A stretch of DNA of 64,000 nt, taken from positions 186,001-250,000 of IMG/VR virus record IMGVR_UViG_3300036760_000522; one strand, written 5' to 3'. Made by a program: the position numbers and the translations under genes. Below the pieces are notes generated by a model. It made no database searches, was not told the origin of the DNA, and worked only from the letters and a program-made list of their open reading frames with translations. Below, in pieces: positions 4,101 through 32,610 of the stretch (positions within the stretch are counted from its first letter, which is position 1; each line of letters begins with the position of its first letter).

Positions 4101-7100
4101 AGACATCTTCAGTGAAGCCAGCAGCCACTCCTGTAAAGACGCCGTCGAGCGTCGCAGAAGTGATCTGAAAGCGCCAAGAAAGAGCTAGGATGTGAGGGAA
4201 GGACGTGTCGACTGTTCGAGTCCAGAAAATTGGTTGTCCAAAAGGGAAAGCTCCCGTCGATGCATCGATCACCGTTAGGACGCCAGCAGACGTGCTCGTG
4301 GTGCCTGTTCCACGGCGTACCCAAGGGACAGAATCAAGCTCAGGTAGTGTCGTGGCTTCGTAACTTACGAACGACTCGTTGACAATTCGTGTTTCCGAAG
4401 GGTACGCGATCCGGTGCGTCGGGCTGTTGAGCAATAGAAGCGTCGGATCGTTCAGAACCGGAGTATAGGCTCTCTCATAAGCACGATAGTGCAATTCCCG
4501 AAGCTGAGGCGGGTCAAGAGGTGCCGAGATGTCGAGGGGTGTGTAGTCACTCGGACGAATCAAAACGTTTCGGTACTGGTAAACGTGAGCTGATCGTGGC
4601 GAGACGTTGTTGAGTCGAAACTCCTTCGAGTTCAAACGCCGGATCTCTACGGTTGGGTTGCAACACCAGCTGTAGTTCACAGACACGAAGTCGTCAGGGT
4701 CAGGAGTAGTAGGCAGGACCACCTGACCCAACAACCCAATCACAGCATCCGGCACAACAAGGTTGCCGTTGACGATGACTTCAACATCGGAAGGGTCATC
4801 TGCAATCTCACCGTTGCGCGGATCAAAGAGTTCCCAAAACAAGGTTCCGCTGGATGGTTCCGGAACAGTGAAACTTGCTTGCAAGCGTGCTTGCGTCGAA
4901 GACGGTACGGACAATATTTTGAAAGTACCGGAAACCGTCGAGTACACAGTTCGGCTACCCGAACCTGTAAACAGTTCCAGCTTCACACTGTCCGCCGCGG
5001 ACAGTGAATCGTTGATCTGAACAGCCAACCCGACCACGGACGAACTCGTTGTCGGTGGTAGCCCCAAAGATCCGAGACGTAAGTATAGACCAACATGTTG
5101 TGCTGTGAGTGTCGCACCAGGCAACGTTACCTGTGACACACTGGTGATCGAAGCCCCAGAGCCTCTTTGTAGAACCAGCGGAGGGCGGGCAATGGGACCG
5201 CGATCTGTGAAAACGCTGCGTACAGTCAAAGGAACAGAAGACGAGAAGATTGCGGTATTGAAAGTCGGATCGGTCGGGTTACCTGCCACGTCCGTAGGCG
5301 TACCCAAAATGTTGACCGCCAACTGATACGATCCACTTCCAAGTCCCAGTGTTTCTAGAGAAACGCTTTCTGGACTGGTCGACCACACACGCTTGATTGC
5401 AACGCTCGTAGGACCTGTGATCGAATACTCGACAGGCGTCGTGAGCACACCGTTGGTCCGCATCGGCTGGTCAAACACGACAGTCACAACGCCTTCGTCT
5501 GTGACCGTCGTAGACTGGACCTGAGGACCAAGAATACCTGATGTGTAAAACACGTGATCGAAATCAAACAACGTATCCGCTCGTGTGCGGAGACCTCGAA
5601 TCTCAAGCAAGTAGTTCGCTTGATTGGTCAGCTTGTTCGTCGTCTCAAAAGCTATCTGTTCGACGGCCGAGAGATGACGCCAGCTGAGCGATCCGTTCTG
5701 GGAGTCCACCAAAGGTAACCGACGATCGATCTGAACGTCAATTGTAGTTAGTCCAGCTGTCGAAGCAGAACCTGTTGTGACAGGAAAGTCTGTTCCGTTG
5801 ACGTTCACTTGGTCGGAAATACCGACGGTGTCTCCCGACACAATGATAGGACCGACCGAAACGATCCGATAGACCCCCGGCACACGACCATTAAGAATTT
5901 CAATGTAGGAACCAACATCGTGACCAATGAACCCCCCATCGAGACGCAAAGTGTCCGAAAGAAAGTTGAGGTCCTGTACGTTGACCAGTAACCCTGTACT
6001 GCCCGTTTGAAGCACGTTCGCGATAGGGTTCGCACGCTGAATGTGCGCGGGCACACCGCCAGGTAGTGCGAGAAGTCGGTAGTGCGTGAGATCTTGAACG
6101 CCTGCGAACATCAGCTCAGGCACGGTCAACGTGACCCCAAACCCGTCGCTCGAAACAACGACAGGCACAGGGGTCTCGAGTTCAACCGTTACAAATTCAA
6201 ATATTGTAACGACGTCTTCGAGAACTCGCACGTTATCGGAAACGCGTGTGACGCTGTCTGTGACCGTATCGGAATCAGACAGGATCCGATCGACCTCAGC
6301 ACGCTCGGCTAAGACAGTATCGCCGGCTGTGACGCTGTCTTCGAGGACACGTGCGTTGTCTGAGTCTCGAGCGATCTCGTCTGGAATGTCGAAAATCGTG
6401 TCGTCAACATCAATGTCTACATCGATCGACTCCGCCAAGACGGTGTCCGTCGGACTAGCTACAACATCCGACAAAGAGACATCGACCAGACGATTCAAGA
6501 GAACAGCCAGATCGTCAAAAACAACGAGTAGTTCGATGAACTCTCGTACCCAAGCGACATCGCGAAGAATCGTCTCCGTCAGCGCCAATGAATCTGAAAC
6601 AACGACGCCACGTTCAGCGGTAACAAAGACTTGATCGGTGACCGCCGCAGTATCCGCCAGTGAAATGGCAATGGCCACTGAAGCTGAAACTGAATCCAGT
6701 ACGGTATCTGTGTCGGTAGCGAATCGCTCGTAAGGGACATCGATCGAGAGTGTGTCGCCGATGGAAATTGTGTCGCTAGCAATACCTCCTAGAATCGTCT
6801 CTACAGTGGTTGTGTCAGCAGCAACAATCGCATCCGAAAATTCCCGCTCATACAAGTTCCCAGCACTAAGGAGTTCCGTCAGCGAGACAATGTCTGCGAC
6901 TACCCGCTCATAGAAGACGTCAAGGGCAGTCGAGTCCGCAGTCGAGTCAATATCTTCGGAACTTCGCTGAAACTCGGCAGTTCTCGTAAGTTCGTCAAAA
7001 ACCGAAATCGTGTCGGCAGGGAAGACTGTCTCAACCAACAAAGAGGTGTCCGAAACACTGATCGTGTCGGATGCTTCCCGGGCGGTATTAGCCTCGGTGC

Positions 7101-7641
7101 TGATCTGATCGGTAAAGCTTGGGGCGTCCGAAACATCTCGTACATAGTTAGTCGCAACTTCCAATTGGTCGGTGACGGAAATCGTGTCATCACCAGAAAC
7201 ATTGGGCTCTGAAGTGACCTGATCCGTGAGTGTCGCAGTGTCGCTCGCATCACGGACGTAATCCGTGCTTGCTGCGATCTCGTCAGTAAAGCTGACGTTG
7301 TCGTTTACTCCGTAGAATCCCTCGATGACCAGTTGGTCAGCGACACTGAAGACATCGCTGACGCTACGTACGTAGTTGGTTTCGGCGAGACGCTCATCAA
7401 CCGCGCCTAAAACATCCGGCGAAGGTGTTCTTTGGAAGTCTAGACTCGTAAGTGCCGTGTCAGCGACGGAATCTGAATCCGAAGCTGACCGGTCGTAAGC
7501 GCTGGCACTCGACCCTGTGTCTGTGGTCGAAACAACGGACTCGTCGATGGTCGCCGAGTAGAGCGTACCAGTCGACGTGACTTCGCTCAGCGTGTGCGGG
7601 TCCTCGACCGCAATGGAATCGCCTAGTGTAACGTCGATCAC
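1153..7641 (-). CDS. Giant virion structural protein (2162 aa): N-terminal Asp/Ser/Thr repeat stalk followed by Ig-like and repeated lectin-like beta-sandwich domains (baseplate/fibre associated)
   Basis: Long ORF with beta-rich composition; ~20-aa repeats in the first ~490 aa; four (S/T)YxxxxxPE ... HxYR modules. Confidence 0.8.
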   Translation of the reverse strand: MIDVTLGDSIAVEDPHTLSEVTSTGTLYSATIDESVVSTTDTGSSASAYDRSASDSDSVADTALTSLDFQRTPSPDVLGAVDERLAETNYVRSVSDVFSVADQLVIEGFYGVNDNVSFTDEIAASTDYVRDASDTATLTDQVTSEPNVSGDDTISVTDQLEVATNYVRDVSDAPSFTDQISTEANTAREASDTISVSDTSLLVETVFPADTISVFDELTRTAEFQRSSEDIDSTADSTALDVFYERVVADIVSLTELLSAGNLYEREFSDAIVAADTTTVETILGGIASDTISIGDTLSIDVPYERFATDTDTVLDSVSASVAIAISLADTAAVTDQVFVTAERGVVVSDSLALTETILRDVAWVREFIELLVVFDDLAVLLNRLVDVSLSDVVASPTDTVLAESIDVDIDVDDTIFDIPDEIARDSDNARVLEDSVTAGDTVLAERAEVDRILSDSDTVTDSVTRVSDNVRVLEDVVTIFEFVTVELETPVPVVVSSDGFGVTLTVPELMFAGVQDLTHYRLLALPGGVPAHIQRANPIANVLQTGSTGLLVNVQDLNFLSDTLRLDGGFIGHDVGSYIEILNGRVPGVYRIVSVGPIIVSGDTVGISDQVNVNGTDFPVTTGSASTAGLTTIDVQIDRRLPLVDSQNGSLSWRHLSAVEQIAFETTNKLTNQANYLLEIRGLRTRADTLFDFDHVFYTSGILGPQVQSTTVTDEGVVTVVFDQPMRTNGVLTTPVEYSITGPTSVAIKRVWSTSPESVSLETLGLGSGSYQLAVNILGTPTDVAGNPTDPTFNTAIFSSSVPLTVRSVFTDRGPIARPPLVLQRGSGASITSVSQVTLPGATLTAQHVGLYLRLGSLGLPPTTSSSVVGLAVQINDSLSAADSVKLELFTGSGSRTVYSTVSGTFKILSVPSSTQARLQASFTVPEPSSGTLFWELFDPRNGEIADDPSDVEVIVNGNLVVPDAVIGLLGQVVLPTTPDPDDFVSVNYSWCCNPTVEIRRLNSKEFRLNNVSPRSAHVYQYRNVLIRPSDYTPLDISAPLDPPQLRELHYRAYERAYTPVLNDPTLLLLNSPTHRIAYPSETRIVNESFVSYEATTLPELDSVPWVRRGTGTTSTSAGVLTVIDASTGAFPFGQPIFWTRTVDTSFPHILALSWRFQITSATLDGVFTGVAAGFTEDVSAFVIGFLDVAGVKKIGLLKRGSADNPALVSAWTGGVDTLGNPTNLPANFDWGVLHSYRFYRDLSGTVRLYVDGEVVETLRILAVEAPFLEELASPFDEVQDVFFGSVSRPAASVSAWDFVRYLVLPTNALQTAPSSFVSYEANVEPEVDAKPWIPIGFHGTETILATNTLLLDSTSATDTSTATQVGLIGGDFRGFVRLEPLLTSASQFVVDVEVQGRTQTHGVDPYGLMFAVDDSQRLTQVCFLADAAVPKLSYGGRSLPEDFSPYVWTRTGGSAVAMVGRILRLTDASVADGVLYFIEDLEPVLSDQRVIASGVDYIFEFRVEAISYTVDGSGFAGVFAQAYDGARAVGVQFEILAGVRYVTFCSDGVPFVPGRFAFDWFDGDPHTYRLSKSTTGDLVSLFIDGTFVGSLAYSSFTVPVPTDAMVSFGSATPVSVGSISVADWHYCNAWRVRSDLQRFVGIWKGYDPNALTGYHTSTKITGRNVAINGNALGDPLADFFGSGVVAGDLLIVDAGANKGVYEISGVGSSTTLTIPSTWPLAPSLVDYRILRETDWSISHKYRLSKDSTGEVDLFLDSDPNPLIRISYSSTDLPGSSSGIVLTLSAALPAIVFGSFSPENLCQSSWNYVRYGITRSPTELRIAPHHQVINQWNVMESPERLYTVLPHELTSFKSSSTGIVPRKDPDFLADPGLPAWTQLNEGTPLVPSTQTFETRAPYVVTEFVSVLNNPEDVLNNDGDFVLNDGSTRIRLEVPDDILYSCLDVIEQSTGALALIAPADDSCGPELGGFQYVREVCLTYDGTVLPENDTTAPTPWELVSDVPVDVSASVAGGALSYGTVGGATVYRNPTPLLDAPGLITEAVFRLRVAADSTLGVGDTQIRFGISAPGFTVAIALLTSGIAERFAIVSDQQDGKYLGAISLDYLDGRYHTYRIERDPGAGVVRVSVDPGPQSFDIGVSDAISMTADLYCFKIGGPLGSPLC
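6170..7641 (-). repeat. Protein-level tandem repeat, ~18-21 aa unit (x-D-x5-D-x7-Y-x-R), over 20 copies
   Basis: e.g. SDVFSVADQ, SDTATLTDQ, DDTISVTDQ, SDAPSFTDQ, SDTISVSDT; degenerate at DNA level. Confidence 0.85.
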
Positions 7642-7748
7642 ACACTACCGCCCAAATCCGAACACCTACTAACGAACCGGATCAAAAGTGTTTTCCAGCG
7701 GCATCAGAAGGGACCTCACGTCTCAAAAAACAGCTGTTTCATCTGTTT

Positions 7749-8096
7749 TTGAACTGGGTTAAGCAGGAGAAGCGAAGGGACACGCGGAAATTGAAACAAA
7801 ACCACCAACGGCTCGCACACGAGCTCATGCAGTCACTGGGAAGCTGCCTCAAGCAGCCATTTCAACTTGTCGCTTACACTTCACACACGTCCCGAAATCC
7901 AGGCGCCGTCACATCGCTGTACTTCGTTGTGAGTTGTAAGCAAACCGACGTACGCGTTGATGTGACCTCCGACGGATTCGAAATCCAGCCCAACCAGGGG
8001 AACGCCAAGACACACACTACGGAGAGGGAACGCCACGATCAGAAGTCGTTGGTCGTACGCTTGCAAAGCTTACTCGACGGTTTCGGCCCGAACTGA
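7749..8096 (+). CDS. Hypothetical protein
   Basis: 115-aa ORF filling the gap at the start of the plus-strand island; start uncertain. Confidence 0.5.
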   Translation: MNWVKQEKRRDTRKLKQNHQRLAHELMQSLGSCLKQPFQLVAYTSHTSRNPGAVTSLYFVVSCKQTDVRVDVTSDGFEIQPNQGNAKTHTTERERHDQKSLVVRLQSLLDGFGPN

Positions 8097-8124
8097 GCGA
8101 AAGTGTTTTTGCTCTGTCTAGGTA

Positions 8125-8436
8125 GTGACCGTCCGTCGAATTGTCTCTCGCTACAAAGAAGGGATCATCCCGGCTTCTTACTTCAAGTCGGGCACAATAG
8201 TTCTCTACGGCAAGTACAAAAATCACCGCGGGAGAGTTGCGGGCTTTGGTCAAGACAAGTGGGGAAATCCGACGATTGAAATCGAACCCATTCCCAAAGG
8301 GCGCAAGCAAAACAAGGTCATCGGGCTCTACAGGATCTGGCGGGCGGATGTAAAAGAAAAAGCTCTGGCCGCTGTTCGCAAGACCGTAGCTCAACGCATT
8401 GTTGAACGACACCGCCAAGCAAATGGGACGTCCTAG
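8125..8436 (+). CDS. Small basic protein with KOW/SH3-like core; candidate internal virion protein
   Basis: GTIVLYGKYKNHRGRV core; N-terminal RRIVSRYKEG and C-terminal QRIVERHRQA leader-like motifs. Confidence 0.7.
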   Translation: MTVRRIVSRYKEGIIPASYFKSGTIVLYGKYKNHRGRVAGFGQDKWGNPTIEIEPIPKGRKQNKVIGLYRIWRADVKEKALAAVRKTVAQRIVERHRQANGTS

Positions 8437-8456
8437 TCATTGGTGTTTCAGTATCC

Positions 8457-9515
8457 GTGAAAGCACCGTTCCCGTACTTCGGCGGCAAAAGCCGGGTCGC
8501 TCAGGCTGTCTGGAAGGCGTTCGGAGAAAACGTACCGAACTACATAGAACCGTTCTGCGGGTCCTGTGCAGTGCTTCTTGCTCGCCCCGGTGGGCCCGGA
8601 AAGATTGAAACTGTCAACGACGGTTGTTCCTACATTTGCAATTTCTGGAGATCAATCAAACACAACCCACAAAAAACTGCCGAGTGGTGCGACTGGCCTG
8701 TGTCCGAACTCGATTTGCATGCACGTCACGCATGGCTCATCAAGCAGTCGATCGATCTCCGCGAGAAGCTCCGAGCTGATCCCGACTACCACGACGCCAA
8801 AATCGCAGGATGGTGGGTCTGGGGGATCTGCCAATGGATCGGAGGGGGTTGGTGCAAAACCCCCTACCAACAAAGGCCGCACCTACATGATGGCGACCGA
8901 GGTGTGAACGCGGCAGAAAAACAGCTGAAGCAACAAATCCCTGGGATCCACGCTTCCGGTGTGCACAGCTTTGGAACACGTCTCCCAGCTATCGGCAACG
9001 ATCGGGCGCTCAATGGCCTGACTGCATCACCGGCACTCGAATGGTTTCAAATGCTCTCACAACGCCTCAGGAGAGTTCGATTGGTCCACGGCGACTGGAC
9101 CAGGGTACTCGGGTCTTCGACGCTTGGGAAGGGCAGGAACGTCGGAGGAAGACGGCCTACAGCTGTTTTTCTCGACGCCCCTTACGACGACGAGTTACGG
9201 GACCCTGGACTCTACACTGAGGATACAAAAAACCTCTCAGTGAAAGTCCGCATTTGGGCCCTTGAGCACGGTGATGATCCAGACCTCAGGATCGCACTTT
9301 GTGGGCTTGCGTCGGAGCACGACGGCCACATGCCGGCGACTTGGCGTGTCCATCGTTGGACGGGGGCTTCCGGCTACTCACGTGGAAAAAACCGAAGTCG
9401 TACACGCCACGAAGAAACAATTTGGTTCAGTCCGCACTGCCTCCATGCCGAAATGGACGAAACACTTTCGGCGCTCCACAACTTCGATTCAATTTCAGAA
9501 GCCTCTGATTCGTAG
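8457..9515 (+). CDS. DNA adenine methyltransferase (D12/Dam-like)
   Basis: PFPYFGGKSR, YIEPFCGSCAV (motif I), VND and FLDAPY (DPPY variant). Confidence 0.85.
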   Translation: MKAPFPYFGGKSRVAQAVWKAFGENVPNYIEPFCGSCAVLLARPGGPGKIETVNDGCSYICNFWRSIKHNPQKTAEWCDWPVSELDLHARHAWLIKQSIDLREKLRADPDYHDAKIAGWWVWGICQWIGGGWCKTPYQQRPHLHDGDRGVNAAEKQLKQQIPGIHASGVHSFGTRLPAIGNDRALNGLTASPALEWFQMLSQRLRRVRLVHGDWTRVLGSSTLGKGRNVGGRRPTAVFLDAPYDDELRDPGLYTEDTKNLSVKVRIWALEHGDDPDLRIALCGLASEHDGHMPATWRVHRWTGASGYSRGKNRSRTRHEETIWFSPHCLHAEMDETLSALHNFDSISEASDS

Positions 9516-9523
9516 GTACTAAC

Positions 9524-9841
9524 ATGGCTTCCAAAATCACGATCGGCTGTAGCCCTTGGGGAGAAAACTGTGCACAGCTCGGACAACCCGGCTACGTTGA
9601 GCTCGCCCAGAGAGAGCTCAAGGCTTTCAAGGCTCAGCTAGAGCGTCACTTTGCCGCCAAACACAACGGCGCAAAGCCGACATGTCATCTTGTCATTGTC
9701 GGCAACGAACACGATTACGGGACATACTACGACGTCCAAGCCAGTTACCGAAACGGGACGGAAGAGGTCGACGCATTCTGGCTCGAGAGCAACACACCAG
9801 AAAACTGGGATGCTACAGCCACAGCCGAGCTCAACGCATGA
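9524..9841 (+). CDS. Hypothetical phage protein (HDYGTYYDV motif)
   Basis: Clean ORF 8 nt after the methylase; ATGA overlap with the next gene. Confidence 0.75.
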   Translation: MASKITIGCSPWGENCAQLGQPGYVELAQRELKAFKAQLERHFAAKHNGAKPTCHLVIVGNEHDYGTYYDVQASYRNGTEEVDAFWLESNTPENWDATATAELNA

Positions 9842-10083
9842 CTTTCACAGAATGGAAGCAAGCCTGCCTCACGACACTAGAAGATATCGGGCTACTCATC
9901 GATGACTTGTGGGATTCAGACGATCCTTACGAAGTCTTCCACATGAGCAGAGAGGCTTACAAAGCGCAACAAAGCCCGCGAAGTTTTGTCGAGGACATCT
10001 TCTCAGAGGAGATTGCGCGAGCTGAGGGCGAAGCTCAAGAACGGCGCGACGCGAACGCACACTACGTGGACAGCGAAGAATGA
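9838..10083 (+). CDS. Small acidic protein (81 aa)
   Basis: Start reassigned to ATG 9838 (ATGA overlap); 21 of 81 residues are Asp/Glu. Confidence 0.7.
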   Translation: MTFTEWKQACLTTLEDIGLLIDDLWDSDDPYEVFHMSREAYKAQQSPRSFVEDIFSEEIARAEGEAQERRDANAHYVDSEE

Positions 10084-10085
10084 AT

Positions 10086-10781
10086 TTAGATGTCGGCGTA
10101 ACCCCGGCCTCTTCGGGCACGAGGTCGAACCAGGAAGAATTCAAAAGATCCGTGAGTAGGAGACGCTACAGGTGTTCCGTGGACACCTGCGATTCCAACG
10201 TCGCGAAGCGTAATACCGCTCAAAGAAGTTCCTGGCGAGCCGTGGTTGAGCTTCCACCGACTCTGTAGACCGTTGACGATGTGATCGCTACCACGAGCCG
10301 CGAACAAAGCCTGGATCTCGTTGTCTGACAGAACCCTGGTGTAGAGCCGAATGTCTTCCAGGTAGCCGCCAAATGGGCGTCCACTGTCAACTGGACTAGC
10401 CCCGATTAGCAGATCAGATGTGTTAGTCCCAACCGAAGTTGGGACACCTCCAGAGCCATCCTCCACACCATTCACGTAGACTCGATGTTCCGTAGTGCCA
10501 TCTCGAATCCCGACAACAAAGTACGTTGTACTAGCCGAGATGGTTGTAGCCCCCGCAGCGACGGGATAGGACCCATTAAAAGTACCGAACTCTAAGACAT
10601 TGGAAGAGAGAACGCTGAATTCCCACCCTGATCCTGATCCTAGACTACCCTCTTTGGAGATGATCTCGTCGCGCGTTCCAGTGCTGTCACGACGAACCCA
10701 CGCCGTAACCGTCATGTTGTTCGTCGTCTCGTGATTGTCTGAGCAGTTGACCCAATTGGATCCGTTCAACAGGATCGACAT
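10086..10781 (-). CDS. LamG/concanavalin-A-like lectin domain protein
   Basis: MTVTAWV, RVYVNG, LLIGA, FGGYLEDIRLYTRVLSDNEIQAL: typical LamG_3 signature. Confidence 0.88.
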   Translation of the reverse strand: MSILLNGSNWVNCSDNHETTNNMTVTAWVRRDSTGTRDEIISKEGSLGSGSGWEFSVLSSNVLEFGTFNGSYPVAAGATTISASTTYFVVGIRDGTTEHRVYVNGVEDGSGGVPTSVGTNTSDLLIGASPVDSGRPFGGYLEDIRLYTRVLSDNEIQALFAARGSDHIVNGLQSRWKLNHGSPGTSLSGITLRDVGIAGVHGTPVASPTHGSFEFFLVRPRARRGRGYADI

Positions 10782-16473: not shown

Positions 16474-16827
16474 CTAGAGACGGCCTCGAGCTTCATCGAA
16501 CTTCAAATTCTGTAGTATCTGACCGTAGTCAGTGAAAAACTTGCTGATTGACCGAATGAACTCAAGGTCATCTGTGTTCCAAGCAAACTTTGCTTTCCTG
16601 AAATCGATCCGCATCCGGTTGATGAGTTTGACGTAGAGGGGTGCACGATCAAGCTGCCTGAACTCTGGAATTGCAGCTACAACTTGGTTGAGTTTGGCTT
16701 CTGCGAACTTGAGTAGGTTTCTCCGGTACGGGTCGGGAATGAGGTTTTTTGGTTGCCACCGACGATCGGTTCGGTAAAAATTCTGGCCTTCTGCATCCAG
16801 AATTTGTGGGATGATACTGAACGCCAC
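16474..16827 (-). CDS. Hypothetical protein
   Basis: 117-aa ORF within the operon. Confidence 0.7.
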   Translation of the reverse strand: MAFSIIPQILDAEGQNFYRTDRRWQPKNLIPDPYRRNLLKFAEAKLNQVVAAIPEFRQLDRAPLYVKLINRMRIDFRKAKFAWNTDDLEFIRSISKFFTDYGQILQNLKFDEARGRL

Positions 16828-16837
16828 ACGACTTCAT

Positions 16838-17443
16838 TCAAACAAGTGTGAACTGGTTACTCAACTGACCGTCGGCACGAACTCGAACCACATCCCCTGG
16901 AGCAAGGCCCACGATCAGGGTCGAGTCGATCACGATCGACGTAGCGCCTACAGCGCCCGGTGGAACCGCAATGATTTGCGCTTGCGTCAACGTGACATTT
17001 CCAACTCCGGCTCCCGTCAACGTCACGCTGGTAATGTCAGGCGACGTTGAAACGAAACCTGTTCCTGTGATCGTCAAATCTCCGGCAGCCGGTGAGTTGA
17101 GCGTCAAGGCTGTGATGACAGGAGCTGTCAAATCACTCGGACTGAACGTGAGGCTGGTGATCAACCCTGCATTCAAGAGGCCACGAATCTTGCCACCATC
17201 ACGACTGTGTACGACACGCGTCGTGAGTCGCAAATCGATGTAGCCAGGAATCAACGGCTCACCGGCTTTCGTGCGTCGTACGTAGCACGGTTGCTTCGGC
17301 TCATTCGCATAGCCGTCGCGTTTGTAGGCTCGAGGATCCCCTGTACTACCTAGGCGGTGAGCGCCCTTATTTGGCAGACCGTCGTCGATGTCGTCGACAA
17401 GAATCGGACCCTGAACCGTTTGGGCGTGTATGAGTCGCAGCAT
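16838..17443 (-). CDS. Virion structural protein with IPT/TIG-like Ig domain
   Basis: APVITAL...GDLTITGTGF...GAVGATSIVI; AGGAG SD. Confidence 0.8.
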   Translation of the reverse strand: MLRLIHAQTVQGPILVDDIDDGLPNKGAHRLGSTGDPRAYKRDGYANEPKQPCYVRRTKAGEPLIPGYIDLRLTTRVVHSRDGGKIRGLLNAGLITSLTFSPSDLTAPVITALTLNSPAAGDLTITGTGFVSTSPDITSVTLTGAGVGNVTLTQAQIIAVPPGAVGATSIVIDSTLIVGLAPGDVVRVRADGQLSNQFTLV

Positions 17444-17448
17444 TTTGA

Positions 17449-17483
17449 GGCTCCTACGTTCAGGAGCCCAATAAAGGAACTAG
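17449..17483 (-). promoter_or_regulatory. Putative late promoter plus hairpin sequestering the SD of 16838..17443
   Basis: CTAGTTCCTTTAT-tg-GGCTCCT-gaacgt-AGGAGCC-tcaaa-ATG. Confidence 0.55.
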
Positions 17484-18127
17484 CGAGGCAAGTAGTTCAC
17501 AAGCGCAGCCGAGAACGCTACCGTGCCCCCAGAGCCTCTTACCAGGACAGTGTCCTGTGGACCTTCCTCGTAACTCAAAACTGTCTGGGGAGCCACCTGA
17601 CGTTCTGGACCGCCTCTTTGGACAGCCACGTACAAGTTGGTACCGCCTGAAGCTGCCTCGTTCTTGAGGTAGAGATCACGGGTACGGAACAGCCAAAGCT
17701 CGAGTGAGCCGGCCACAGTCGCAGCGTTTGGTGCTGTACCCGCGATTTGCACTCGAGCGTGCCCATAGCGTTCCGCATCTGTCAAAACGATAGTCGGAGG
17801 GCCTGCCGTGCCGGCAACCCCGACATAATCCACAGGGACAAATCTCAGCCAAAAGTGTTGCGTATCGGAGATCCCTGCTAACGCAGCAAACGACGTAGGA
17901 TCGAAAGCGATCCGAATCTCATCGCGCGAATTGCTAATCGCCTGCAAGACGGCTGAATTGAGATTTGGGTCCAAATACCCTGAGGAGATGTCTGCGGTCA
18001 AAATCGGCGTGAAAGCGGCATCGAAATTAGTAGCCGCTTCCAAACGGTACCCTTTGACGCCGGACCGCTTTGGTGTCAACAAGTCGACGAGGTGTGGCCG
18101 ACGGCGAAAGATCGAAAAGTCCCTCAT
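17480..18127 (-). CDS. Hypothetical (probably structural) protein
   Basis: 215-aa beta-rich ORF; ATGA overlap with the upstream gene. Confidence 0.75.
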   Translation of the reverse strand: MRDFSIFRRRPHLVDLLTPKRSGVKGYRLEAATNFDAAFTPILTADISSGYLDPNLNSAVLQAISNSRDEIRIAFDPTSFAALAGISDTQHFWLRFVPVDYVGVAGTAGPPTIVLTDAERYGHARVQIAGTAPNAATVAGSLELWLFRTRDLYLKNEAASGGTNLYVAVQRGGPERQVAPQTVLSYEEGPQDTVLVRGSGGTVAFSAALVNYLPR

Positions 18128-18525
18128 GAGGTCGCTTCCTTTGCAACAAGTGCGTCATAAGTAGAAGCGGCTTCGTTACCTTTTGTTGCCCGAACTTGCT
18201 CTCGAGCATCGGCCCAAGTTGCAGCTTCAGCCCCTGCTAGGTTGGGTACTAGACGTGGCTTTTCCACGTGGTCTCTCTCACGCTTAGCGAGAACGTTTCG
18301 ATGCTGGGCTCGATATTTGTTCTCCTTGCCAGCCTTCGACATCCAGCCACCGGAGACGCCATCTTTCAATACAGTGCGGAAGGACGCCGTCAGCACCAAC
18401 TTGAGCGGACGGTTTTCATCGTCGAGTATTTGTTTAGCACCAGACTTGACAGAGTCGAACTCTTCGAACGAGAGTCGACGAGACACCTGAACCCCGTTCT
18501 GATCTTGAAATGTGTAAACAGGCAT
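18124..18525 (-). CDS. FmdB-like (MPxY) protein lacking the zinc-ribbon cysteines
   Basis: Starts MPVYTFQD; later VLKDGVSGGW. Confidence 0.65.
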   Translation of the reverse strand: MPVYTFQDQNGVQVSRRLSFEEFDSVKSGAKQILDDENRPLKLVLTASFRTVLKDGVSGGWMSKAGKENKYRAQHRNVLAKRERDHVEKPRLVPNLAGAEAATWADAREQVRATKGNEAASTYDALVAKEATS

Positions 18526-24171: not shown

Positions 24172-26070
24172 TCACACAAAAACAAAAACCTGCTCAGTAG
24201 CTGGCACCTTTCCTATTCTACCAAGAGGTAGAACCAAGGTGCGCTGCAAACGAAACCCTGCGAGACCTGCCAGTCGCACCAACTCGTCCGCAATCGGGAA
24301 CCGTTGTGCCCCTCGTCGCACATTCTTTGTGTTCACACAAAACAAACCACCGTCACGTAAGTGTCGTTTGGACTTCAACACGAACGGTTGAAGAAACCCT
24401 TCCAGCCAAAGATCCCACGTTGAATACCTGACCCAACTCTGCGCCGCACTATCAGAGTACTTCTCGACCGAAAAGTACGGAGGACTCGTTAGTACAAGAT
24501 CCGCGCGCAAGTCTGCCAGGTCCACGTCTTCGAACGGGTATTCAAAAAAGTCAAAATGGCCAACCACCGATTGCAAAGCTGTGTATGACGCACCAGCTTT
24601 AGGATGAGGATCAACGCCAACGTATCGTCTACCGCTTGCCAGAGTCCCTACAGCACGACCACCATAACCAGCACACGGATCCAAGACGGTACCGCCAACA
24701 GGGCACAACGCCTCCACCAGAGCCTTTGCAAAACAAGGGCGAAAATTGGTCGGGCCACGAACAACGGCCTGCAAAGCGCGAAACACACGTACAGGCTGCA
24801 CAGGATCACCAACAGCCAATTGAAACTTCACGGCCCTACGCACATATTCCTGGTCGTACCACGCCGATCGCACTGAAGGACGATCTTGATATCTAGCGTC
24901 ATATCTGTGTGGAAAGAACCGCTGACACAGCTTCGATCCTGAACGTGTTTCACGCACCAATCTATCTTCCACTAGTTCAGTTTTGGACAACAACAGCTTA
25001 GACCAATCTATCTCCGCCTCCTCCATCGACGGCACAACCAAAGGCAGCACAGTTCTCGAAAGAACAGCGACGACGCTCTCTACATACGTTAGTGTGCGAG
25101 CGTCCAGCCTCTTGATCGCAAGACTCGCAGTTTCAACGTCCAACTCGACTTTGCTGCTACGTGAAGGACGACCTGTACATCCAGGGGCTAAACCGTGTTG
25201 TTTCCTCCAACGCGAAACACTTGTGCGGGACACTTGAAGTACATCAGCGATGTCGTCGGTATGGAGGCCCCGATCAAATAACGATCGCAAACGATCGTAG
25301 GTCAACAGATCTCGAGGCGCTAAACCAGCCTTGGGCGTCTTGACAGCGATCTTGTAACCGAGGCTAGGATGTAGATGTGGACGCACCAAATCCAAAAACC
25401 TGTTCAGCGCTGTGCGCCCTTGAATGTGGAGGGATCCGTCCTCGTAGACTTTGCTTCTGATACCCAGACTTGTCAGAATTCCAACCTGCACGCGTTGATC
25501 CTCTAGTGAGGGACCAACAGTGATCCTTACGTAATTACCTGAACGCGATCCATCATCCATGAACCAGACAGCCAGAGCTAAGCCGTCTACCCACTCTACT
25601 GGCAAGCGTGTAAACGTTTTGGGCCCTGAACCTGACGGGTAGAACAACTGCCAATAAGGAAAGAGGGCTCGACACGCATGTGTGAACAATCGATGACCCA
25701 GATACTCCCCTTTATCTGCTTTCCGAATGGCTACTGTAAACACCCCCCACTCCTCAGCTTTCCACAACAAATACTCATGTTGTTTGACGGAGTGGTGTTC
25801 TTGGTATCGTGCTGTATTTGTACCAGAACGCCGTAAGTTACCGTCACCTAACATTGATCCAACTAGAATTGACCTCAGACGATCGGTCAAAGTATCTGGG
25901 AGCCCAAAGCGATCACTCTTAGTCAGTGTCGGAATGCCGTACTTCTGGCGAAGACGACTAACGTGTGCTTGGGAAATACCAAACACACGACCAATTTCGG
26001 TCTCTGTCTTGTGCTGATCAAGATAAAGGTCCCGCAGAAATTGTTCCGTCAATCGTGTCGACACCTTCAC
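24172..26070 (-). CDS. HTH + double-motif LAGLIDADG endonuclease + HTH + amino-DNA methyltransferase fusion
   Basis: LVGSMLGDG and LAVWFMDDG (LAGLIDADG_2); IADVLQVSRTSVSRW (HTH); VLDPCAGYGGR and LTSPPY (MTase). Confidence 0.85.
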   Translation of the reverse strand: MKVSTRLTEQFLRDLYLDQHKTETEIGRVFGISQAHVSRLRQKYGIPTLTKSDRFGLPDTLTDRLRSILVGSMLGDGNLRRSGTNTARYQEHHSVKQHEYLLWKAEEWGVFTVAIRKADKGEYLGHRLFTHACRALFPYWQLFYPSGSGPKTFTRLPVEWVDGLALAVWFMDDGSRSGNYVRITVGPSLEDQRVQVGILTSLGIRSKVYEDGSLHIQGRTALNRFLDLVRPHLHPSLGYKIAVKTPKAGLAPRDLLTYDRLRSLFDRGLHTDDIADVLQVSRTSVSRWRKQHGLAPGCTGRPSRSSKVELDVETASLAIKRLDARTLTYVESVVAVLSRTVLPLVVPSMEEAEIDWSKLLLSKTELVEDRLVRETRSGSKLCQRFFPHRYDARYQDRPSVRSAWYDQEYVRRAVKFQLAVGDPVQPVRVFRALQAVVRGPTNFRPCFAKALVEALCPVGGTVLDPCAGYGGRAVGTLASGRRYVGVDPHPKAGASYTALQSVVGHFDFFEYPFEDVDLADLRADLVLTSPPYFSVEKYSDSAAQSWVRYSTWDLWLEGFLQPFVLKSKRHLRDGGLFCVNTKNVRRGAQRFPIADELVRLAGLAGFRLQRTLVLPLGRIGKVPATEQVFVFV

Positions 26071-26289: not shown

Positions 26290-27174
26290 TCAAACTCTGG
26301 TCACGACCAGGCGGCTGACAGCACGTGGGTTGAACGCGCCGATGCCGATATTTTCAAAGACCGAAAATCCGATCAGACGGTTCTTGGGATCGTCGGCGCT
26401 CAAAACCGTGAGTTCTGTACGAACCGGGAACCGGCCAAAGTTCTCGGCTTCCGCGCAGATGTAGATGAACCCAACCGGTACGATTCTGCTCGTGATGATC
26501 TGCGCTCCCCACAACACAGCTTGTAGGCCTGTGTTGAGAAGGACGGCCTGGCTTTCGATATCCAGGATGTCCCGACCGAACTTGCGGATGTCCGCATAGT
26601 CGGTCGCGTTCATGAAGATCCGGGCGACCCGAAGCCCGTGACGCTCGACCTCTGCGAATGCGTCGGCCAAGAACGACGGTGAGACCGGTGCGACCACAGC
26701 CAAGTCAGGGTTGGTCTGACCGGGTAGTGTGTCGAAGCCGCTGACAGCAACGCTGTCAACGATTGCGAAACCGCGCTCGTCTTCAGCTGCTGCAATCTGC
26801 GCTTTCGCCAGGTCCTGAGCACGCTCGATCATGTCGAACCTGCGCTCCTTGATCTGGGAGAGCGGGATCTCAGGATTCGAAGCAATCTCGAAGACCGGGA
26901 AGATCACACGACGTGACTTCTGGATCGACTGGATGTTGGCGCCTTCTTCACCGACGACGAACGCCGTGACTTCAGGATCCTTGTCGTAAACAGGCAAGGC
27001 GCCGTCAGGCAGCTCTTCCACGAGGAAGCTCTTCCGGATGACTGCCACGTAGTCGCGTCGTAGACGCAACGATTGAATCATCGAAGCCGCAAGCTTCTCA
27101 CGCCCTTGCGGTGTTCTGATGTGTTCGCCGATTAGGCGCTGTCGGATCTCGTTACTGATTATGGAAGCTGACAT
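26290..27174 (-). CDS. Major capsid protein (HK97 fold)
   Basis: GREKLAASM...RRDY...ELPDGALPVYD, IFMNATDYADIRKFG, LWGAQII, IGAFNPRAV; follows protease, scaffold and decoration genes; strong terminator. Confidence 0.88.
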   Translation of the reverse strand: MSASIISNEIRQRLIGEHIRTPQGREKLAASMIQSLRLRRDYVAVIRKSFLVEELPDGALPVYDKDPEVTAFVVGEEGANIQSIQKSRRVIFPVFEIASNPEIPLSQIKERRFDMIERAQDLAKAQIAAAEDERGFAIVDSVAVSGFDTLPGQTNPDLAVVAPVSPSFLADAFAEVERHGLRVARIFMNATDYADIRKFGRDILDIESQAVLLNTGLQAVLWGAQIITSRIVPVGFIYICAEAENFGRFPVRTELTVLSADDPKNRLIGFSVFENIGIGAFNPRAVSRLVVTRV

Positions 27175-29071: not shown

Positions 29072-29147
29072 AACTAAACTTCTCCGTCCGTTTTCGTCCC
29101 CGCAGAAAACTTGGTCACCTTCACCCAGATCACCGATAAAAAAGGAA

Positions 29148-30566
29148 TCACGTAGTTCCTAGGTCAAAGAGCTGACCTTTCTCGATCAAAGCTTTTTGCT
29201 CCGCCGCTGTGAGCACATGACCCAAAACCCTCTGACAAACCGCTAAAAATGCGGTATTTCCGCCATGTCGACGTGGACCTCCCACCTCAAGAACGGTTCG
29301 GTAAACCCGATCAGTCCCCGCCTGCTTGATTCGACCCATTTGGTCCAAAACCCTAGATATTACAAGTACTTCCGCTCCTGACAAAGATTTGTTGTTCGCA
29401 ACACGACGCCAACCACCAAGTCGATGCAAGACAAAACCTGTCAAGATTCGTTGCACACAGTCCGGATTCCGTATTCGAGCAGACAAGTAGCGCTCGACTG
29501 ATCTGAACTCGGGGATCTTAGAAGCTTCGTGTGTGAGGCCTCCATTCGTGTCATCTCGCAGAGTTGAACGAGGTGGAACAGGCCCGTTCAAGTCACTTCG
29601 AACCTTCTCCAAAGCCTTCTGCCGAATCAATTTAGCGACCTCATCAACAGCGGTATCAATATCGCTCGGGGAGCCAGAAGGCGTCACCTCGTTTGACGGA
29701 TCAACGAAGGGGTTCTGATCTTGTGCTGCTTTAAGCGAAGCACCAAGAGTCGCCGTTGGTGGACGTAAAGGCAAAACTTGGTTGAGCTGTGATGCGGCAG
29801 CTTCGCCTGGAAAAAGGTTACGAACAACTGCACCCTTGAATGCCGGATTCGCAACCCAAGATGCCTCGATGAATTTTACGCTGTCATTTTCTGAGGCGTT
29901 GCCACACAACTCTGCCACTTTGTGTGTCTTCCCAAAAGCGTCTTTGAACGTGTTTCCCTTCGCGTATTTTATGTGGCTGCAAAGCTCTGTGTCGTCAGTG
30001 GCCACGTTTCCGCAGAACGAACACTGGCTGTAGAGAATTGAACAACCCATGCTGAGAGAATTGATCTTCCCTGACTCGATCCCAGCAATCAAAGCTCGGT
30101 GCTTCCGATCAGTCGCCACCAAAATGTCAATGTAGACACTCGGGCCCGTGTCCCGGGCCACAGCGTCAATGATCCGTCCCTTGGAGAGCTCCTTGACCTG
30201 TAGGTGCTCCATGAAATTGTTGGCACCAATGAACGTACGATACGTTGCCAACAACAACGGACGGGACCACGCGTCGTTGTTGTTATTTATAAAACGAGAC
30301 GTCTCCGACGTGATGTAGTAATCAAGGAAACGCCGGTTGACTTCAAAGCTGCCTTGTAAGTGACGACCCAGTGGACCTGGACCATTTTCGGTATCCACTG
30401 ACGCCATGATCGTGGCGTGACTCAACAAGTACTGTGCCGGATCGTATTTCTGTAACACAGTGCTCTGTGTAGCAACCTTGCGCCCAGCGGTGACATGACG
30501 CTGCCAAGCATCAACTGAAGCCAAAGGCTCCGCGACTACTGCGTTGGCGTACTTAAGAAAGGCCAT
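29148..30566 (-). CDS. Prohead (maturation) protease with zinc-finger insertion
   Basis: NNNDAW, FMEH...SKGRIIDA, SLSMGC...CSFCG...CSH, FIEASWVANPAF. Confidence 0.8.
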   Translation of the reverse strand: MAFLKYANAVVAEPLASVDAWQRHVTAGRKVATQSTVLQKYDPAQYLLSHATIMASVDTENGPGPLGRHLQGSFEVNRRFLDYYITSETSRFINNNNDAWSRPLLLATYRTFIGANNFMEHLQVKELSKGRIIDAVARDTGPSVYIDILVATDRKHRALIAGIESGKINSLSMGCSILYSQCSFCGNVATDDTELCSHIKYAKGNTFKDAFGKTHKVAELCGNASENDSVKFIEASWVANPAFKGAVVRNLFPGEAAASQLNQVLPLRPPTATLGASLKAAQDQNPFVDPSNEVTPSGSPSDIDTAVDEVAKLIRQKALEKVRSDLNGPVPPRSTLRDDTNGGLTHEASKIPEFRSVERYLSARIRNPDCVQRILTGFVLHRLGGWRRVANNKSLSGAEVLVISRVLDQMGRIKQAGTDRVYRTVLEVGGPRRHGGNTAFLAVCQRVLGHVLTAAEQKALIEKGQLFDLGTT

Positions 30567-31674: not shown

Positions 31675-32610
31675 TCACGGTGCGAGAGCGCGCCCTGTAG
31701 ATGACTTGCCGTCCTGAACCGCCTGTGTTTGGTCGTCAGCGTAAGCCGCCATGTAGGGCTCATCAGCGTCGGTCTGTATGGGCCTCGAAGGAGAATTGAA
31801 CGTCGACATGTACGACTCGTCGGAATCGCTCTTCAAAACCTTGGCGTTCTTCAGGGTCTCAACTTGACGTTTAGCCAACGAGCCCTGTCCGTACATACCG
31901 GCTTCGACACGATCCGCGATCTTGTCCAAATGGTTGACAAGCCCCTTGGCTGTGTCAAACGGCATGCCCCAAGACGCGTGTCGCTCCTGAATTGTGTTTG
32001 CAGCTGTATCGAGGTTGCTCAAAACCGTATCGACTGCTGTCTTCTGTTCTTTCGTCATAACTGTTCCTCTCGTACTTGACTGAATTGTCAAAAGAGTATT
32101 CCCAACCCCTGGCTCAGACCGACCAGATAACTTGGCAAGCAAGCGGTTGTAGACCATGGGATCCAGGTCCGTGGTGGTCGTAGGCCCGGCACCGCGTATC
32201 GCCAGATCCAAAGCTGCTCGATACTTGGTCTCAGGATCCATCAGACGCAGAAGCTCAGAATTCAAGCGTTCACGAGCAAGCCTAAGTATCAAGCTCTCAT
32301 CGTGGTCACGACGTTGCGTCCACATAGCTCCGGCCGGAGGCTTGTGATCCTTGGGATCGACGCCGTGGTAAACAGCTTCAACCAACTTCGACATCGATTT
32401 TCGGAAATCATAAGAAGATCCGCCAATCGATTTGTAGTTCTTGCTACGGTCCGGATCGTTGTCTGTATCTGGGTCCCGCTCGGGTTCAGGATCGACTTGG
32501 TTGCGCTGCCTGTCGTGCCGTGGAGGCTTGGATCGAGGGGACTCCCTGACCAGACGAGTCTCTTCGTCCTCTTCACGCTCACCGACAGTTTTAGTCGCCC
32601 ACAACTCCAC
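31675..32610 (-). CDS. Hypothetical head-module protein
   Basis: 311-aa ORF; twin C-terminal motifs SDSDESYM and TDADEPYM. Confidence 0.75.
   Translation of the reverse strand: MELWATKTVGEREEDEETRLVRESPRSKPPRHDRQRNQVDPEPERDPDTDNDPDRSKNYKSIGGSSYDFRKSMSKLVEAVYHGVDPKDHKPPAGAMWTQRRDHDESLILRLARERLNSELLRLMDPETKYRAALDLAIRGAGPTTTTDLDPMVYNRLLAKLSGRSEPGVGNTLLTIQSSTRGTVMTKEQKTAVDTVLSNLDTAANTIQERHASWGMPFDTAKGLVNHLDKIADRVEAGMYGQGSLAKRQVETLKNAKVLKSDSDESYMSTFNSPSRPIQTDADEPYMAAYADDQTQAVQDGKSSTGRALAP

What the first reader, a model, noticed from the sequence alone, without database searches (positions are those of the whole stretch)
17441..17483. T4-style translational switch: SD hidden in a hairpin that the late promoter would bypass
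Seen: GGCTCCT-gaacgt-AGGAGCC places the AGGAG SD in the 3' arm of a perfect 7-bp stem. The late-promoter motif ends 2 nt before the 5' arm. Applying the 14-15-nt spacing seen at the leaderless genes puts +1 at about 17455-17457, past the anti-SD arm. Known: T4 soc, e and I-TevI use this arrangement to silence read-through transcripts. Inference: the same logic operates here, and it independently supports the promoter motif.
Basis: partly seen in the sequence, partly recalled or inferred. Interest (0 to 1): 0.62.

Follow-up and report, generated by a model that had tools for sequence, protein, structure and literature searches.

The report
Promoter-bypassed hairpin hiding a ribosome site
In a 301-kb uncultivated sediment phage, a strong RNA hairpin hides the ribosome-binding site of a virion gene, and a conserved promoter-like motif is placed so that its own transcripts would lack the blocking arm, much as in phage T4; this rests on sequence comparison only, and only this phage and its near-identical strain have the hairpin.

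Summary
GGCTCCT (17468-17462) pairs with AGGAGCC (17455-17449). The stem extends to 9 bp with two G·U pairs, at -14.4 kcal/mol. It holds the AGGAG ribosome-binding site 7 nt before the ATG (17443) of a 201-aa ORF with an Ig-like TIG domain, inside the head/packaging and virion gene block.

28 non-redundant orthologous upstream regions from related huge phages share TTCCTTTTAT-N12-AC|GAGGAC. In three unrelated gene families, ORFs without a ribosome-binding site start at the 15th or 16th nt after TAT. That places +1 at 17457-17455, past the 5' arm.

Complementarity between promoter spacer and ribosome-binding site is exceptional here (p about 0.001). The cost of opening this site ranks first of 84 genes in the genome.

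Three things limit the claim:
- The hairpin occurs only in this phage and a 97%-identical strain. 27 other orthologues lack it, so no covariation test is possible.
- No RNA data exist.
- The motif is a rare, gene-specific element (about 3-10 copies per genome). It was not shown to be late.

Verdict: a plausible T4-like, promoter-dependent translational gate. It is analogous to T4, not homologous, and is unproven. It is a new member of a known kind and of moderate interest.

The parts
17480..18127 (-). Upstream 215-aa ORF, function unknown. Its stop codon TAG is at 17482-17480. Transcripts running through it would carry both arms of the hairpin.
   Evidence: ORF list. A same-strand ORF of about 210-217 aa sits in this position in most relatives. 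Its start overlaps the preceding ORF (ATGA). It has no promoter of this class of its own: the CTTATG at 18161 encodes a conserved T-Y-D.
17471..17479 (-). Conserved promoter-like motif TTCCTTTAT. The family consensus is TTCCTTTTAT.
   Evidence: Present upstream of the orthologous gene in 28 non-redundant loci. It is rare elsewhere in those genomes. No hairpin consistently precedes it, so it is not a terminator U-tract.
17462..17468 (-). 5' arm GGCTCCT (the anti-SD), lying in the otherwise variable promoter spacer. With G·U pairs it extends to 17469-17461.
   Evidence: Spacer sequences differ freely among orthologues.
17456..17461 (-). Loop GAACGT. It contains the AC|G box that matches the family's -1/+1 position.
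17455..17457 (-). Predicted transcription start (+1), the 14th-16th nt after TAT.
   Evidence: Leaderless ORFs begin at the 15th or 16th nt after TAT in the 412-aa family (own genome, L090, L091, L092), in L081 and in the own-genome ORF at 63794. Orthologues place AC|G at the same distance. This is inference; no start site was mapped.
17449..17455 (-). 3' arm AGGAGCC, which contains the Shine-Dalgarno AGGAG (17455-17451). It sits in the same position as the conserved initial transcribed box GAGGAC of the relatives.
16838..17443 (-). 201-aa ORF (ATG 17443-17441) with a C-terminal Ig-like IPT/TIG domain; probably a virion protein.
   Evidence: Pfam TIG, E = 4.8e-6. AlphaFold model with pLDDT 79; residues 105-201 match Ig-like domains, including those of phage tail and fibre proteins. 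37 homologous loci found.
17410..17416 (-). GTTCAGG inside the ORF. It is complementary to CCTGAAC (17464-17458) and competes for the 5' arm.
29136..29147 (-). Possible second copy of the motif (TTCCTTTTTTAT). It lies directly after the stop codon of the head-maturation protease ORF and 65 nt upstream of a Q/D/E-rich 389-aa scaffold-like ORF.
   Evidence: Uncertain: in the 87%-identical relative L118 the TAT reads TAC.

Best explanation
A conserved, gene-specific promoter sits in the 36-nt gap in front of a virion gene whose product carries an Ig-like domain. Its consensus is TTCCTTTTAT, about 14 nt of free spacer, then +1 followed by a purine-rich GAGGAC-type box. In this phage lineage the leader has shrunk to about 12-14 nt, so the purine-rich first transcribed bases (AGGAGCC) serve as the Shine-Dalgarno sequence. 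The free promoter spacer has become its exact complement (GGCTCCT).

RNAs that read through from the upstream ORFs carry both arms and fold into a -14 kcal/mol hairpin that buries the SD. The upstream stop codon lies 11 nt before the stem, too far for a terminating ribosome to melt it. RNAs that start at the gene's own promoter begin in the loop or at the first base of the 3' arm. They lack the anti-SD, and their SD is free.

Translation of this ORF is therefore tied to firing of its own promoter, as for T4 e, soc, 49 and I-TevI.

Shown: the sequence anatomy, the conservation of the motif, the motif-to-start spacing and the thermodynamics. Inferred: that the motif is a promoter, the position of +1, that read-through RNA exists, and that the hairpin blocks initiation in vivo.
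For: - Hairpin geometry and stability.
- SD opening cost ranks 1st of 84 genes when only upstream sequence is folded.
- It is the only perfect stem of at least 7 bp in 301 kb with an SD in its 3' arm next to a start codon.
- Spacer-SD complementarity is -15.9 kcal/mol, p about 0.001, in a spacer that varies freely among 28 orthologues.
- The motif is conserved upstream of the orthologous gene in 28 non-redundant loci, with AC|GAGGAC at a fixed distance.
- SD-less ORFs start at the 15th or 16th nt after TAT in several families. In L092 an in-frame stop lies two codons before the ATG; in the own-genome ORF at 63794 it lies four codons before.
- Three other lineages (L111, L114, L002/L096) also place AGGAG or GAGGAG at the predicted +1, so a 5'-terminal SD is a recurrent and presumably working design.
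- There is no sigma-70-like promoter, terminator-like site or Rfam family in the gap, so read-through is likely.
- A strain about 94% identical has 44 differences in 788 nt but none in 17421-17500, about 1% likely at a uniform rate.
- The T4 precedent is documented (PMC3014915).
Against: - No RNA run holds this sequence, so there is no start site and no proof of read-through.
- The hairpin exists only here and in the 97%-identical L001/X4 strain. 27 other orthologous regions show no significant spacer-SD pairing, and relatives with short leaders manage without it.
- With 40 nt of ORF included, an alternative pairing of the 5' arm competes. The long-minus-short difference in opening energy is then only 1.8 kcal/mol, about 33rd of 84.
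- No phage RNA polymerase or clear sigma factor was found that would explain a promoter with TAT at about -15.
- The motif is rare: 0-2 strict copies per related genome and about 3 strong copies here. Its timing is unknown.
- The upstream genes belong to the same structural block, so an early-versus-late purpose is not evident.
- Genome-wide, one SD-sequestering 7-bp stem by chance is not very unlikely. My estimate is an expectation of 0.1-0.2, based on the counts.
Confidence: 0.45

Rival explanations
1. The hairpin is a neutral by-product. The promoter is real, but when the leader shrank in this lineage the spacer came to match the SD by chance. The pairing has no selected regulatory role, and its effect on read-through RNA is irrelevant.
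For: - The hairpin is absent from 27 of 28 orthologous regions, including three other short-leader lineages.
- Stems of at least 7 bp are common: 312 in the genome.
- My estimated chance expectation of one SD-sequestering stem per genome is 0.1-0.2.
- GGCTCC or GCTCC also follows TTATG in L004, L015, L012, L103 and at own-genome position 182105, so part of the arm may be a common spacer variant.
Against: - Perfect 7-bp complementarity (9 bp with G·U) at exactly this gene has p about 0.001 against shuffled spacers.
- The SD opening cost ranks 1st of 84.
- The gap is invariant between strains that differ by 5.6% in the flanks.
- Whatever its origin, a -14 kcal/mol helix over an SD would physically inhibit initiation. 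The T4 e structure reduces lysozyme synthesis about 100-fold (PMC3014915).
Confidence: 0.25
2. Transcription starts upstream of the stem, for instance at or next to the TAT as at phiKZ-type TATG promoters (from my own recollection), or the motif is an RNA-processing site. Every mRNA then carries the hairpin. It would act as a constitutive damper of translation or as a 5'-proximal stabilising stem-loop, opened if at all by a trans-acting factor.
For: - The start site is not mapped.
- TAT at about -15 fits no standard sigma-70 geometry, and no polymerase or sigma factor was identified.
- The motif is AU-rich, as RNase E sites are (general knowledge).
Against: - SD-less ORFs begin at a fixed 15th-16th nt after TAT in several unrelated families. 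A start at TAT would give them 14-15-nt leaders without an SD and with no reason for a constant length.
- The conserved AC|G(A) pyrimidine/purine step lies at that distance in 28 orthologues.
- Even a -10-like reading (start about 7 nt after TAT, near 17464) would remove most of the 5' arm.
Confidence: 0.1
3. The inverted repeat works at the DNA level. GGCTCCT-N6-AGGAGCC spans about -13 to +7 of the promoter and is an operator for a dimeric DNA-binding regulator that switches this promoter.
For: - It is a perfect 7-6-7 inverted repeat centred just upstream of the predicted +1.
- L016 and L010 also carry modest inverted repeats across the predicted +1.
Against: - Inverted repeats across +1 are not a general feature of this promoter class (mean z = -0.07 over 26 instances).
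- No full second copy of the repeat turned up in the motif-context listings of the genome; a dedicated search for the half-sites was not run.
- The 3' half-site coincides with a well-spaced SD, which the RNA reading explains without further assumptions.
Confidence: 0.08
4. The hairpin mediates translational coupling. Ribosomes finishing the upstream 215-aa ORF open the hairpin, or reinitiate, so the two proteins are made in a fixed ratio.
For: - The ORFs are on the same strand with only 36 nt between them.
- The genome holds a second SD hairpin (GATCCTCC/GGAGGATC, -14.9 kcal/mol) whose 5' arm starts 1 nt after a stop codon, which is the classical coupling layout.
Against: - Here the stem base (17469) lies 11 nt beyond the stop codon. 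From general knowledge, a ribosome with the stop in its A site covers about 12 nt 3' of the first A-site base and unwinds less, so it reaches about 17470 and leaves the helix intact (inference).
- The conserved promoter motif fills the whole space between stop codon and stem.
Confidence: 0.07

Closest known systems
T4 genes e (lysozyme), soc, 49 and I-TevI: translation-initiation regions closed in read-through mRNAs and open in transcripts from late promoters
   Same: The SD lies in the 3' strand of a stable local helix. A promoter is placed so that its transcripts lack the 5' strand. The gene sits downstream of co-directional genes with no terminator between them. One of the T4 cases (soc) is also a capsid-surface protein (PMC3014915).
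   Different: - The promoter motif (TTCCTTTTAT with +1 about 15 nt after TAT) bears no resemblance to the T4 late promoter TATAAATA.
- No polymerase or sigma factor is identified.
- The timing classes are unknown, and the upstream genes appear to be structural as well.
- The structure is not conserved among relatives, whereas related T4-type phages are predicted to keep similar e leader structures.
- Nothing here is tested experimentally.
Aeromonas phage Aeh1 mobE and other phage homing-endonuclease genes whose RBS is sequestered in a hairpin
   Same: A local hairpin over the ribosome-binding site limits translation from upstream-initiated transcripts (cited in PMC3014915).
   Different: Those genes are selfish endonucleases embedded in essential genes. 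Here the gene is a conserved virion-module gene with its own conserved promoter.
Translational coupling through SD-sequestering hairpins, as in RNA-phage MS2 and many bacterial operons (general knowledge)
   Same: The SD of a downstream cistron is base-paired in the polycistronic RNA.
   Different: In coupling, the upstream ribosome melts the helix. Here the stop codon is 11 nt from the stem and a promoter motif lies between them. A better candidate for coupling is at own-genome 117091-117119, outside the window.
Leaderless and short-leader phage or bacterial promoters
   Same: Several ORFs start exactly at the inferred +1 of this motif.
   Different: The motif geometry (pyrimidine tract plus TAT ending at about -15) fits no promoter class I know. 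I found no description of it; one full-text search returned nothing relevant.

Membership tests
T4-type promoter-bypassed translational hairpin (e, soc, 49, I-TevI) | The SD and/or AUG is sequestered in a stable intramolecular helix in the longer transcript. | tested here: met
   In silico only. The stem is 7 bp perfect (9 bp with G·U) at -14.4 kcal/mol, and the SD bases are at most 2% unpaired in a 130-nt context. The opening cost ranks 1st of 84. A competing fold appears when more of the ORF is included.
T4-type promoter-bypassed translational hairpin (e, soc, 49, I-TevI) | A promoter whose start site lies within or 3' of the 5' strand of the helix. | tested here: inconclusive
   The motif is conserved in 28 orthologous loci, and leaderless ORFs start at the 15th-16th nt after TAT. 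That puts +1 at 17457-17455, 3' of the arm, which ends at 17462. No 5'-end data exist.
T4-type promoter-bypassed translational hairpin (e, soc, 49, I-TevI) | Read-through transcription from upstream promoters of an earlier temporal class. | not testable with these tools
   No RNA run holds the sequence. The gap has no terminator-like site. The upstream genes lie in the same structural block, so an earlier class is not indicated.
T4-type promoter-bypassed translational hairpin (e, soc, 49, I-TevI) | A T4 late promoter (TATAAATA) read with gp55/gp33, which would indicate homology with the T4 system. | tested here: not met
   The motif is TTCCTTTAT with a different spacing. No clear sigma factor was found: the Sigma70_r2 matches are sub-threshold. 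gp55 itself was not searched for. The resemblance is by analogy only.
T4-type promoter-bypassed translational hairpin (e, soc, 49, I-TevI) | The inhibitory structure is retained in related phages. | tested here: not met
   Only the window and its 97%-identical strain have it. The 27 other orthologous regions do not.
Intrinsic (rho-independent) terminator | A GC-rich hairpin followed directly by a U-tract. | tested here: not met
   The stem is followed by TCAAAATG. The terminator scan finds nothing in the gap on either strand. The pyrimidine tract of the motif is not consistently preceded by a hairpin in 27 loci (mean z = 0.01).
Translational-coupling hairpin | The upstream stop codon lies within or a few nt from the helix, so a terminating ribosome melts it. 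| tested here: not met
   The stop is at 17482-17480 and the stem base at 17469, leaving an 11-nt gap. The reach of the ribosome is taken from general knowledge, so this is an inference from geometry.
Known structured RNA family (Rfam) | A match to a curated covariance model. | tested here: not met
   No match with E up to 1 in 17000-18000 on either strand.

The most novel reading that the evidence does not exclude
A clade of uncultivated huge phages uses a previously undescribed promoter class: a pyrimidine tract plus TAT ending at about -15, a free 14-nt spacer, then +1 followed by GAGGAC. It produces leaderless mRNAs or mRNAs whose very first bases are the Shine-Dalgarno sequence. In this lineage the free spacer has been recruited as an anti-SD, so that one 40-nt element encodes both a promoter and a translational lock that only that promoter can open. 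This would be an independent re-invention of the T4 device with unrelated parts.
Probability: 0.3. Interest if true: 0.6.

Novelty: new member of a known kind. Interest (0 to 1): 0.4.

Why it matters
If it is true, gating translation by choice of promoter is a convergent solution in phages unrelated to T4. It would also give a concrete, testable handle on gene expression in huge phages known only from metagenomes. That handle is a conserved promoter motif with an inferred start site, several candidate leaderless genes, and one locus where long and short leaders should behave differently. None of these needs the unknown host to be tested in reporters. The practical gain for annotation is modest: the motif marks true starts of some SD-less ORFs. 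If the hairpin is a by-product, what remains is the conserved promoter-like element, which is still a useful but small result.

Tried and rejected
- **Close phage relatives.** Megablast and tblastn of the locus against the phage collection found nothing.
- **Function of neighbouring ORFs.** PHROGs and Pfam gave no function for them.
- **Collection-wide pattern scan.** A scan for the motif plus the CCGWCG box returned 55 loci. These are mostly chance hits in unrelated contigs and were not used.
- **Profile search.** An nhmmer profile of the 37-nt promoter region has no power: all E-values exceed 1, and the window copy is missed because it has one T fewer.
- **RNA evidence.** None. All five runs holding the sequence are DNA (sediment metagenomes). 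Laying them gave no variant in the hairpin.
- **Intrinsic terminator.** Rejected.
- **Rfam family.** None.
- **Inverted repeat across +1 as a general promoter feature.** Rejected (mean z = -0.07).
- **Pairing between the pyrimidine tract and the initial transcribed box.** It looked like covariation by eye, but matched pairs (-5.18 kcal/mol) are not better than mismatched pairs (-4.80), permutation p = 0.15.
- **A promoter of the same class before the upstream 215-aa ORF (CTTATG at 18161).** Rejected. It encodes a conserved T-Y-D, and the tract is not conserved.
- **Second motif copy at 29147-29136.** Left as uncertain, because TAT reads TAC in the 87%-identical relative.
- **Phage RNA polymerase or sigma factor.** Rpb2, Rpb1 and T7-type polymerase searches found nothing. 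The T7-type control also rang nowhere, so that blank is uninformative. Sigma70_r2 gave only sub-threshold matches.
- **Function of the 201-aa protein.** Structure searches resolved only the Ig-like C-terminal domain. The N-terminal half is unassigned.
- **Relatives of the own-genome ORF at 63794.** None found.
- **Large protein searches.** Not used. The viral and metagenome scans already gave 37 loci, and the closest relatives appear to be withheld.

Full report
**What is there.** The feature lies on the minus strand.
- A 215-aa ORF ends with TAG at 17482-17480.
- TTCCTTTAT follows at once (17479-17471), then TG.
- The 5' arm GGCTCCT is at 17468-17462, the loop GAACGT at 17461-17456, and the 3' arm AGGAGCC at 17455-17449.
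- TCAAA follows, then the ATG at 17443-17441 of a 201-aa ORF (16838-17443).
- AGGAG sits 7 nt before the ATG, a textbook Shine-Dalgarno (SD) position.
- ViennaRNA extends the helix to 9 bp with two G·U pairs around an AACG tetraloop, at -14.4 kcal/mol. In a 130-nt context the SD bases are at most 2% unpaired.

**Genome context.** The window is bases 186001-250000 of a single 301,550-bp virus record with direct terminal repeats and 53% G+C. Runs holding it are sediment metagenomes. On the same strand, upstream, PHROGs identifies four head and packaging genes:
- large terminase (37809-39794);
- portal (33724-35565);
- head-maturation protease (29148-30566);
- major head protein (26290-27174).

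The ORFs around the finding have no family match, except that the 201-aa protein carries an IPT/TIG domain. An AlphaFold model from 14 homologues (pLDDT 79) shows an Ig-like C-terminal domain. It matches Ig-like domains that include those of phage tail and fibre proteins. The N-terminal half matches nothing. The gene is therefore probably a virion gene, but "late" is an inference from position only.

**Is the motif real?** Yes, and this is the strongest result.
- Homologues of the 201-aa protein were found in 17 viral and 20 metagenome loci. Where a large contig is held, it runs from tens to 529 kb.
- In 28 non-redundant upstream regions the same element appears: TTCCTTTTAT, then 12 variable nt, then AC, then a purine-rich GAGGAC-like box.
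- A same-strand ORF of about 210-217 aa lies upstream in most loci, so the element is truly intergenic.
- No hairpin consistently precedes it, so it is not a terminator U-tract.
- It is rare, with 0-2 strict copies per related genome and about three strong copies in this genome.

It is thus a gene-specific conserved element rather than a general late promoter.

**Where would transcription start?** Several ORFs without an SD begin at a fixed distance from the motif.
- The own-genome 412-aa ORF (GTG at 118360) starts at the 16th nt after TAT.
- Its 80% homologue L090 has the same spacing with a different spacer.
- Its 34% homologue L092 starts at the 16th nt and has an in-frame stop two codons upstream.
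- L091 starts at the 15th nt.
- An unrelated 240-aa ORF in another genome (L081) starts at the 15th nt.
- An own-genome ORF at 63794 starts at the 16th nt, with an in-frame stop four codons upstream.
- The orthologous promoters place a pyrimidine/purine step (AC|G) at the same distance.

Read as leaderless mRNAs, these cases put +1 at the 15th-16th nt after TAT. In the window that is 17456-17455, or G17457 if the AC|G box is followed. It lies 3' of the 5' arm, which ends at 17462. Even a -10-like reading of the motif would start near 17464 and remove most of the arm. Only a start at the TAT itself would keep the hairpin.

**Is the hairpin more than chance?**
- Perfect stems of at least 7 bp are common: 312 in the genome against 105-140 in shuffles.
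- Only this one ends next to a start codon with an SD in its 3' arm.
- With upstream sequence alone, the cost of opening this SD (13.9 kcal/mol) is the highest of 84 SD-bearing genes.
- The 14-nt spacer varies freely among orthologues. Only here is it complementary to the SD region: -15.9 kcal/mol, p about 0.001. The other 27 are not significant; the best are about 0.06.
- A strain about 94% identical has 44 differences in 16801-17588 but none in 17421-17500. At a uniform rate that would happen about 1% of the time.

**What weakens the claim.**
- The hairpin exists only in this phage and its near-identical strain (L001/X4), so there is no covariation.
- Three other lineages (L111, L114, L002/L096) have the same short leader, with AGGAG or GAGGAG at the predicted +1, but no anti-SD.
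- When 40 nt of the ORF are included, the 5' arm can instead pair with GTTCAGG (17416-17410). The ensemble difference between long and short RNAs drops to 1.8 kcal/mol, which is unremarkable. Co-transcriptional folding should favour the local tetraloop hairpin, but that is an inference.
- No RNA data exist.
- No polymerase or sigma factor that could explain the unusual geometry was found.
- The upstream genes belong to the same virion block, and the 215-aa ORF has no promoter of this class of its own. An early-versus-late logic like that of T4 is therefore not evident. A gate that ties translation to the gene's own promoter is the most that can be argued.

**Rivals.**
- *Terminator:* rejected, because there is no U-tract and no scan hit.
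- *Translational coupling:* unlikely on geometry. The stop codon is 11 nt from the stem base, at the edge of a terminating ribosome's reach (general knowledge). A second SD hairpin elsewhere in the genome (117091-117119) does have the coupling layout, with its arm starting 1 nt after a stop.
- *DNA operator:* possible but unsupported, since inverted repeats across +1 are not a feature of the class.
- *Neutral by-product of leader shortening:* this remains the main rival.

**Comparison with known systems.** A T4 review confirms that e, soc, 49 and I-TevI have SD/AUG-sequestering helices. [quoted passage not shown] The window matches that layout in anatomy. It differs in the following:
- the promoter sequence;
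- the transcription machinery, which is unknown here;
- timing, which was not shown;
- conservation, which is lacking.

It works like the T4 device, if it works at all, but is not a member by descent.

**Verdict.** My confidence that promoter-initiated RNAs are translated while read-through RNAs are blocked is about 0.45. The finding is a new member of a known kind and of moderate interest.

Noticed in passing
Own genome outside the window: G000 about 5,058-10,715 (locus L075): The phage carries CRISPR-Cas parts: a Cas7 ORF (Pfam Cas_Cas7, E = 5e-56), an adjacent 793-aa helicase-like ORF, and an array of at least 11 copies of a 36-nt repeat with a period of about 71 nt at about 8,500-9,300. 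A short second array lies at about 10,570-10,715.
   Followed up: partly
Own genome outside the window: G000 117091-117119, minus strand: A second SD-sequestering hairpin (GATCCTCC / GGAGGATC, 11-nt loop, -14.9 kcal/mol) ranks 2nd of 84 in SD opening cost. Its 5' arm starts 1 nt after the stop codon of the 412-aa ORF, which is a classical translational-coupling layout. In the 80% relative L090 this gap instead carries a TTTTTATTG motif.
   Followed up: partly
Window 17464-17458 and 17416-17410, minus strand: CCTGAAC in the 5' arm and loop is complementary to GTTCAGG at codons 10-12 of the ORF. This gives an alternative long-range fold that competes with the SD hairpin in ensemble predictions.
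   Followed up: partly
Window 63166 and 13257 (minus strand), and about 16 further genome sites: A second recurrent upstream motif, CCGGTGTT, lies 8-10 nt before SD-less ATGs. Examples are the thymidylate-synthase-like ORF 62217-63149 and own-genome sites 166398 and 97837. It may be another promoter class with leaderless or very short leaders.
   Followed up: no
Own genome outside the window: upstream of the gene starts at 1762, 66721 (two copies), 123347 and 266053: A third recurrent intergenic motif, CGTCAGATGTTGAGAG, lies upstream of genes on either strand. It is possibly another promoter class.
   Followed up: no
Window 24172-26070, minus strand: A 632-aa ORF combines LAGLIDADG endonuclease, HTH and N6/N4 DNA-methylase domains. 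It lies just downstream of the major head gene and looks like a mobile insertion in the structural block.
   Followed up: no
Window 29147-29136, minus strand: TTCCTTTTTTAT lies directly after the protease stop codon and 65 nt upstream of a Q/D/E-rich, scaffold-like 389-aa ORF. It may be a second promoter of the class, but TAT reads TAC in the 87% relative L118.
   Followed up: partly
Window 10798-10781 and 32414-32394, minus strand: TTTAT plus 12 nt precedes the ATG of ORF 10086-10781. CTTAT plus 15 nt precedes an internal in-frame ATG of ORF 31675-32610. Neither was verified against homologues.
   Followed up: no
Own genome outside the window: about 119,700-125,000: Intergenic stretches here look like tRNA genes by eye (for example GGTTCGATTCC-type T-arms). 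They were not scanned with ARAGORN.
   Followed up: no
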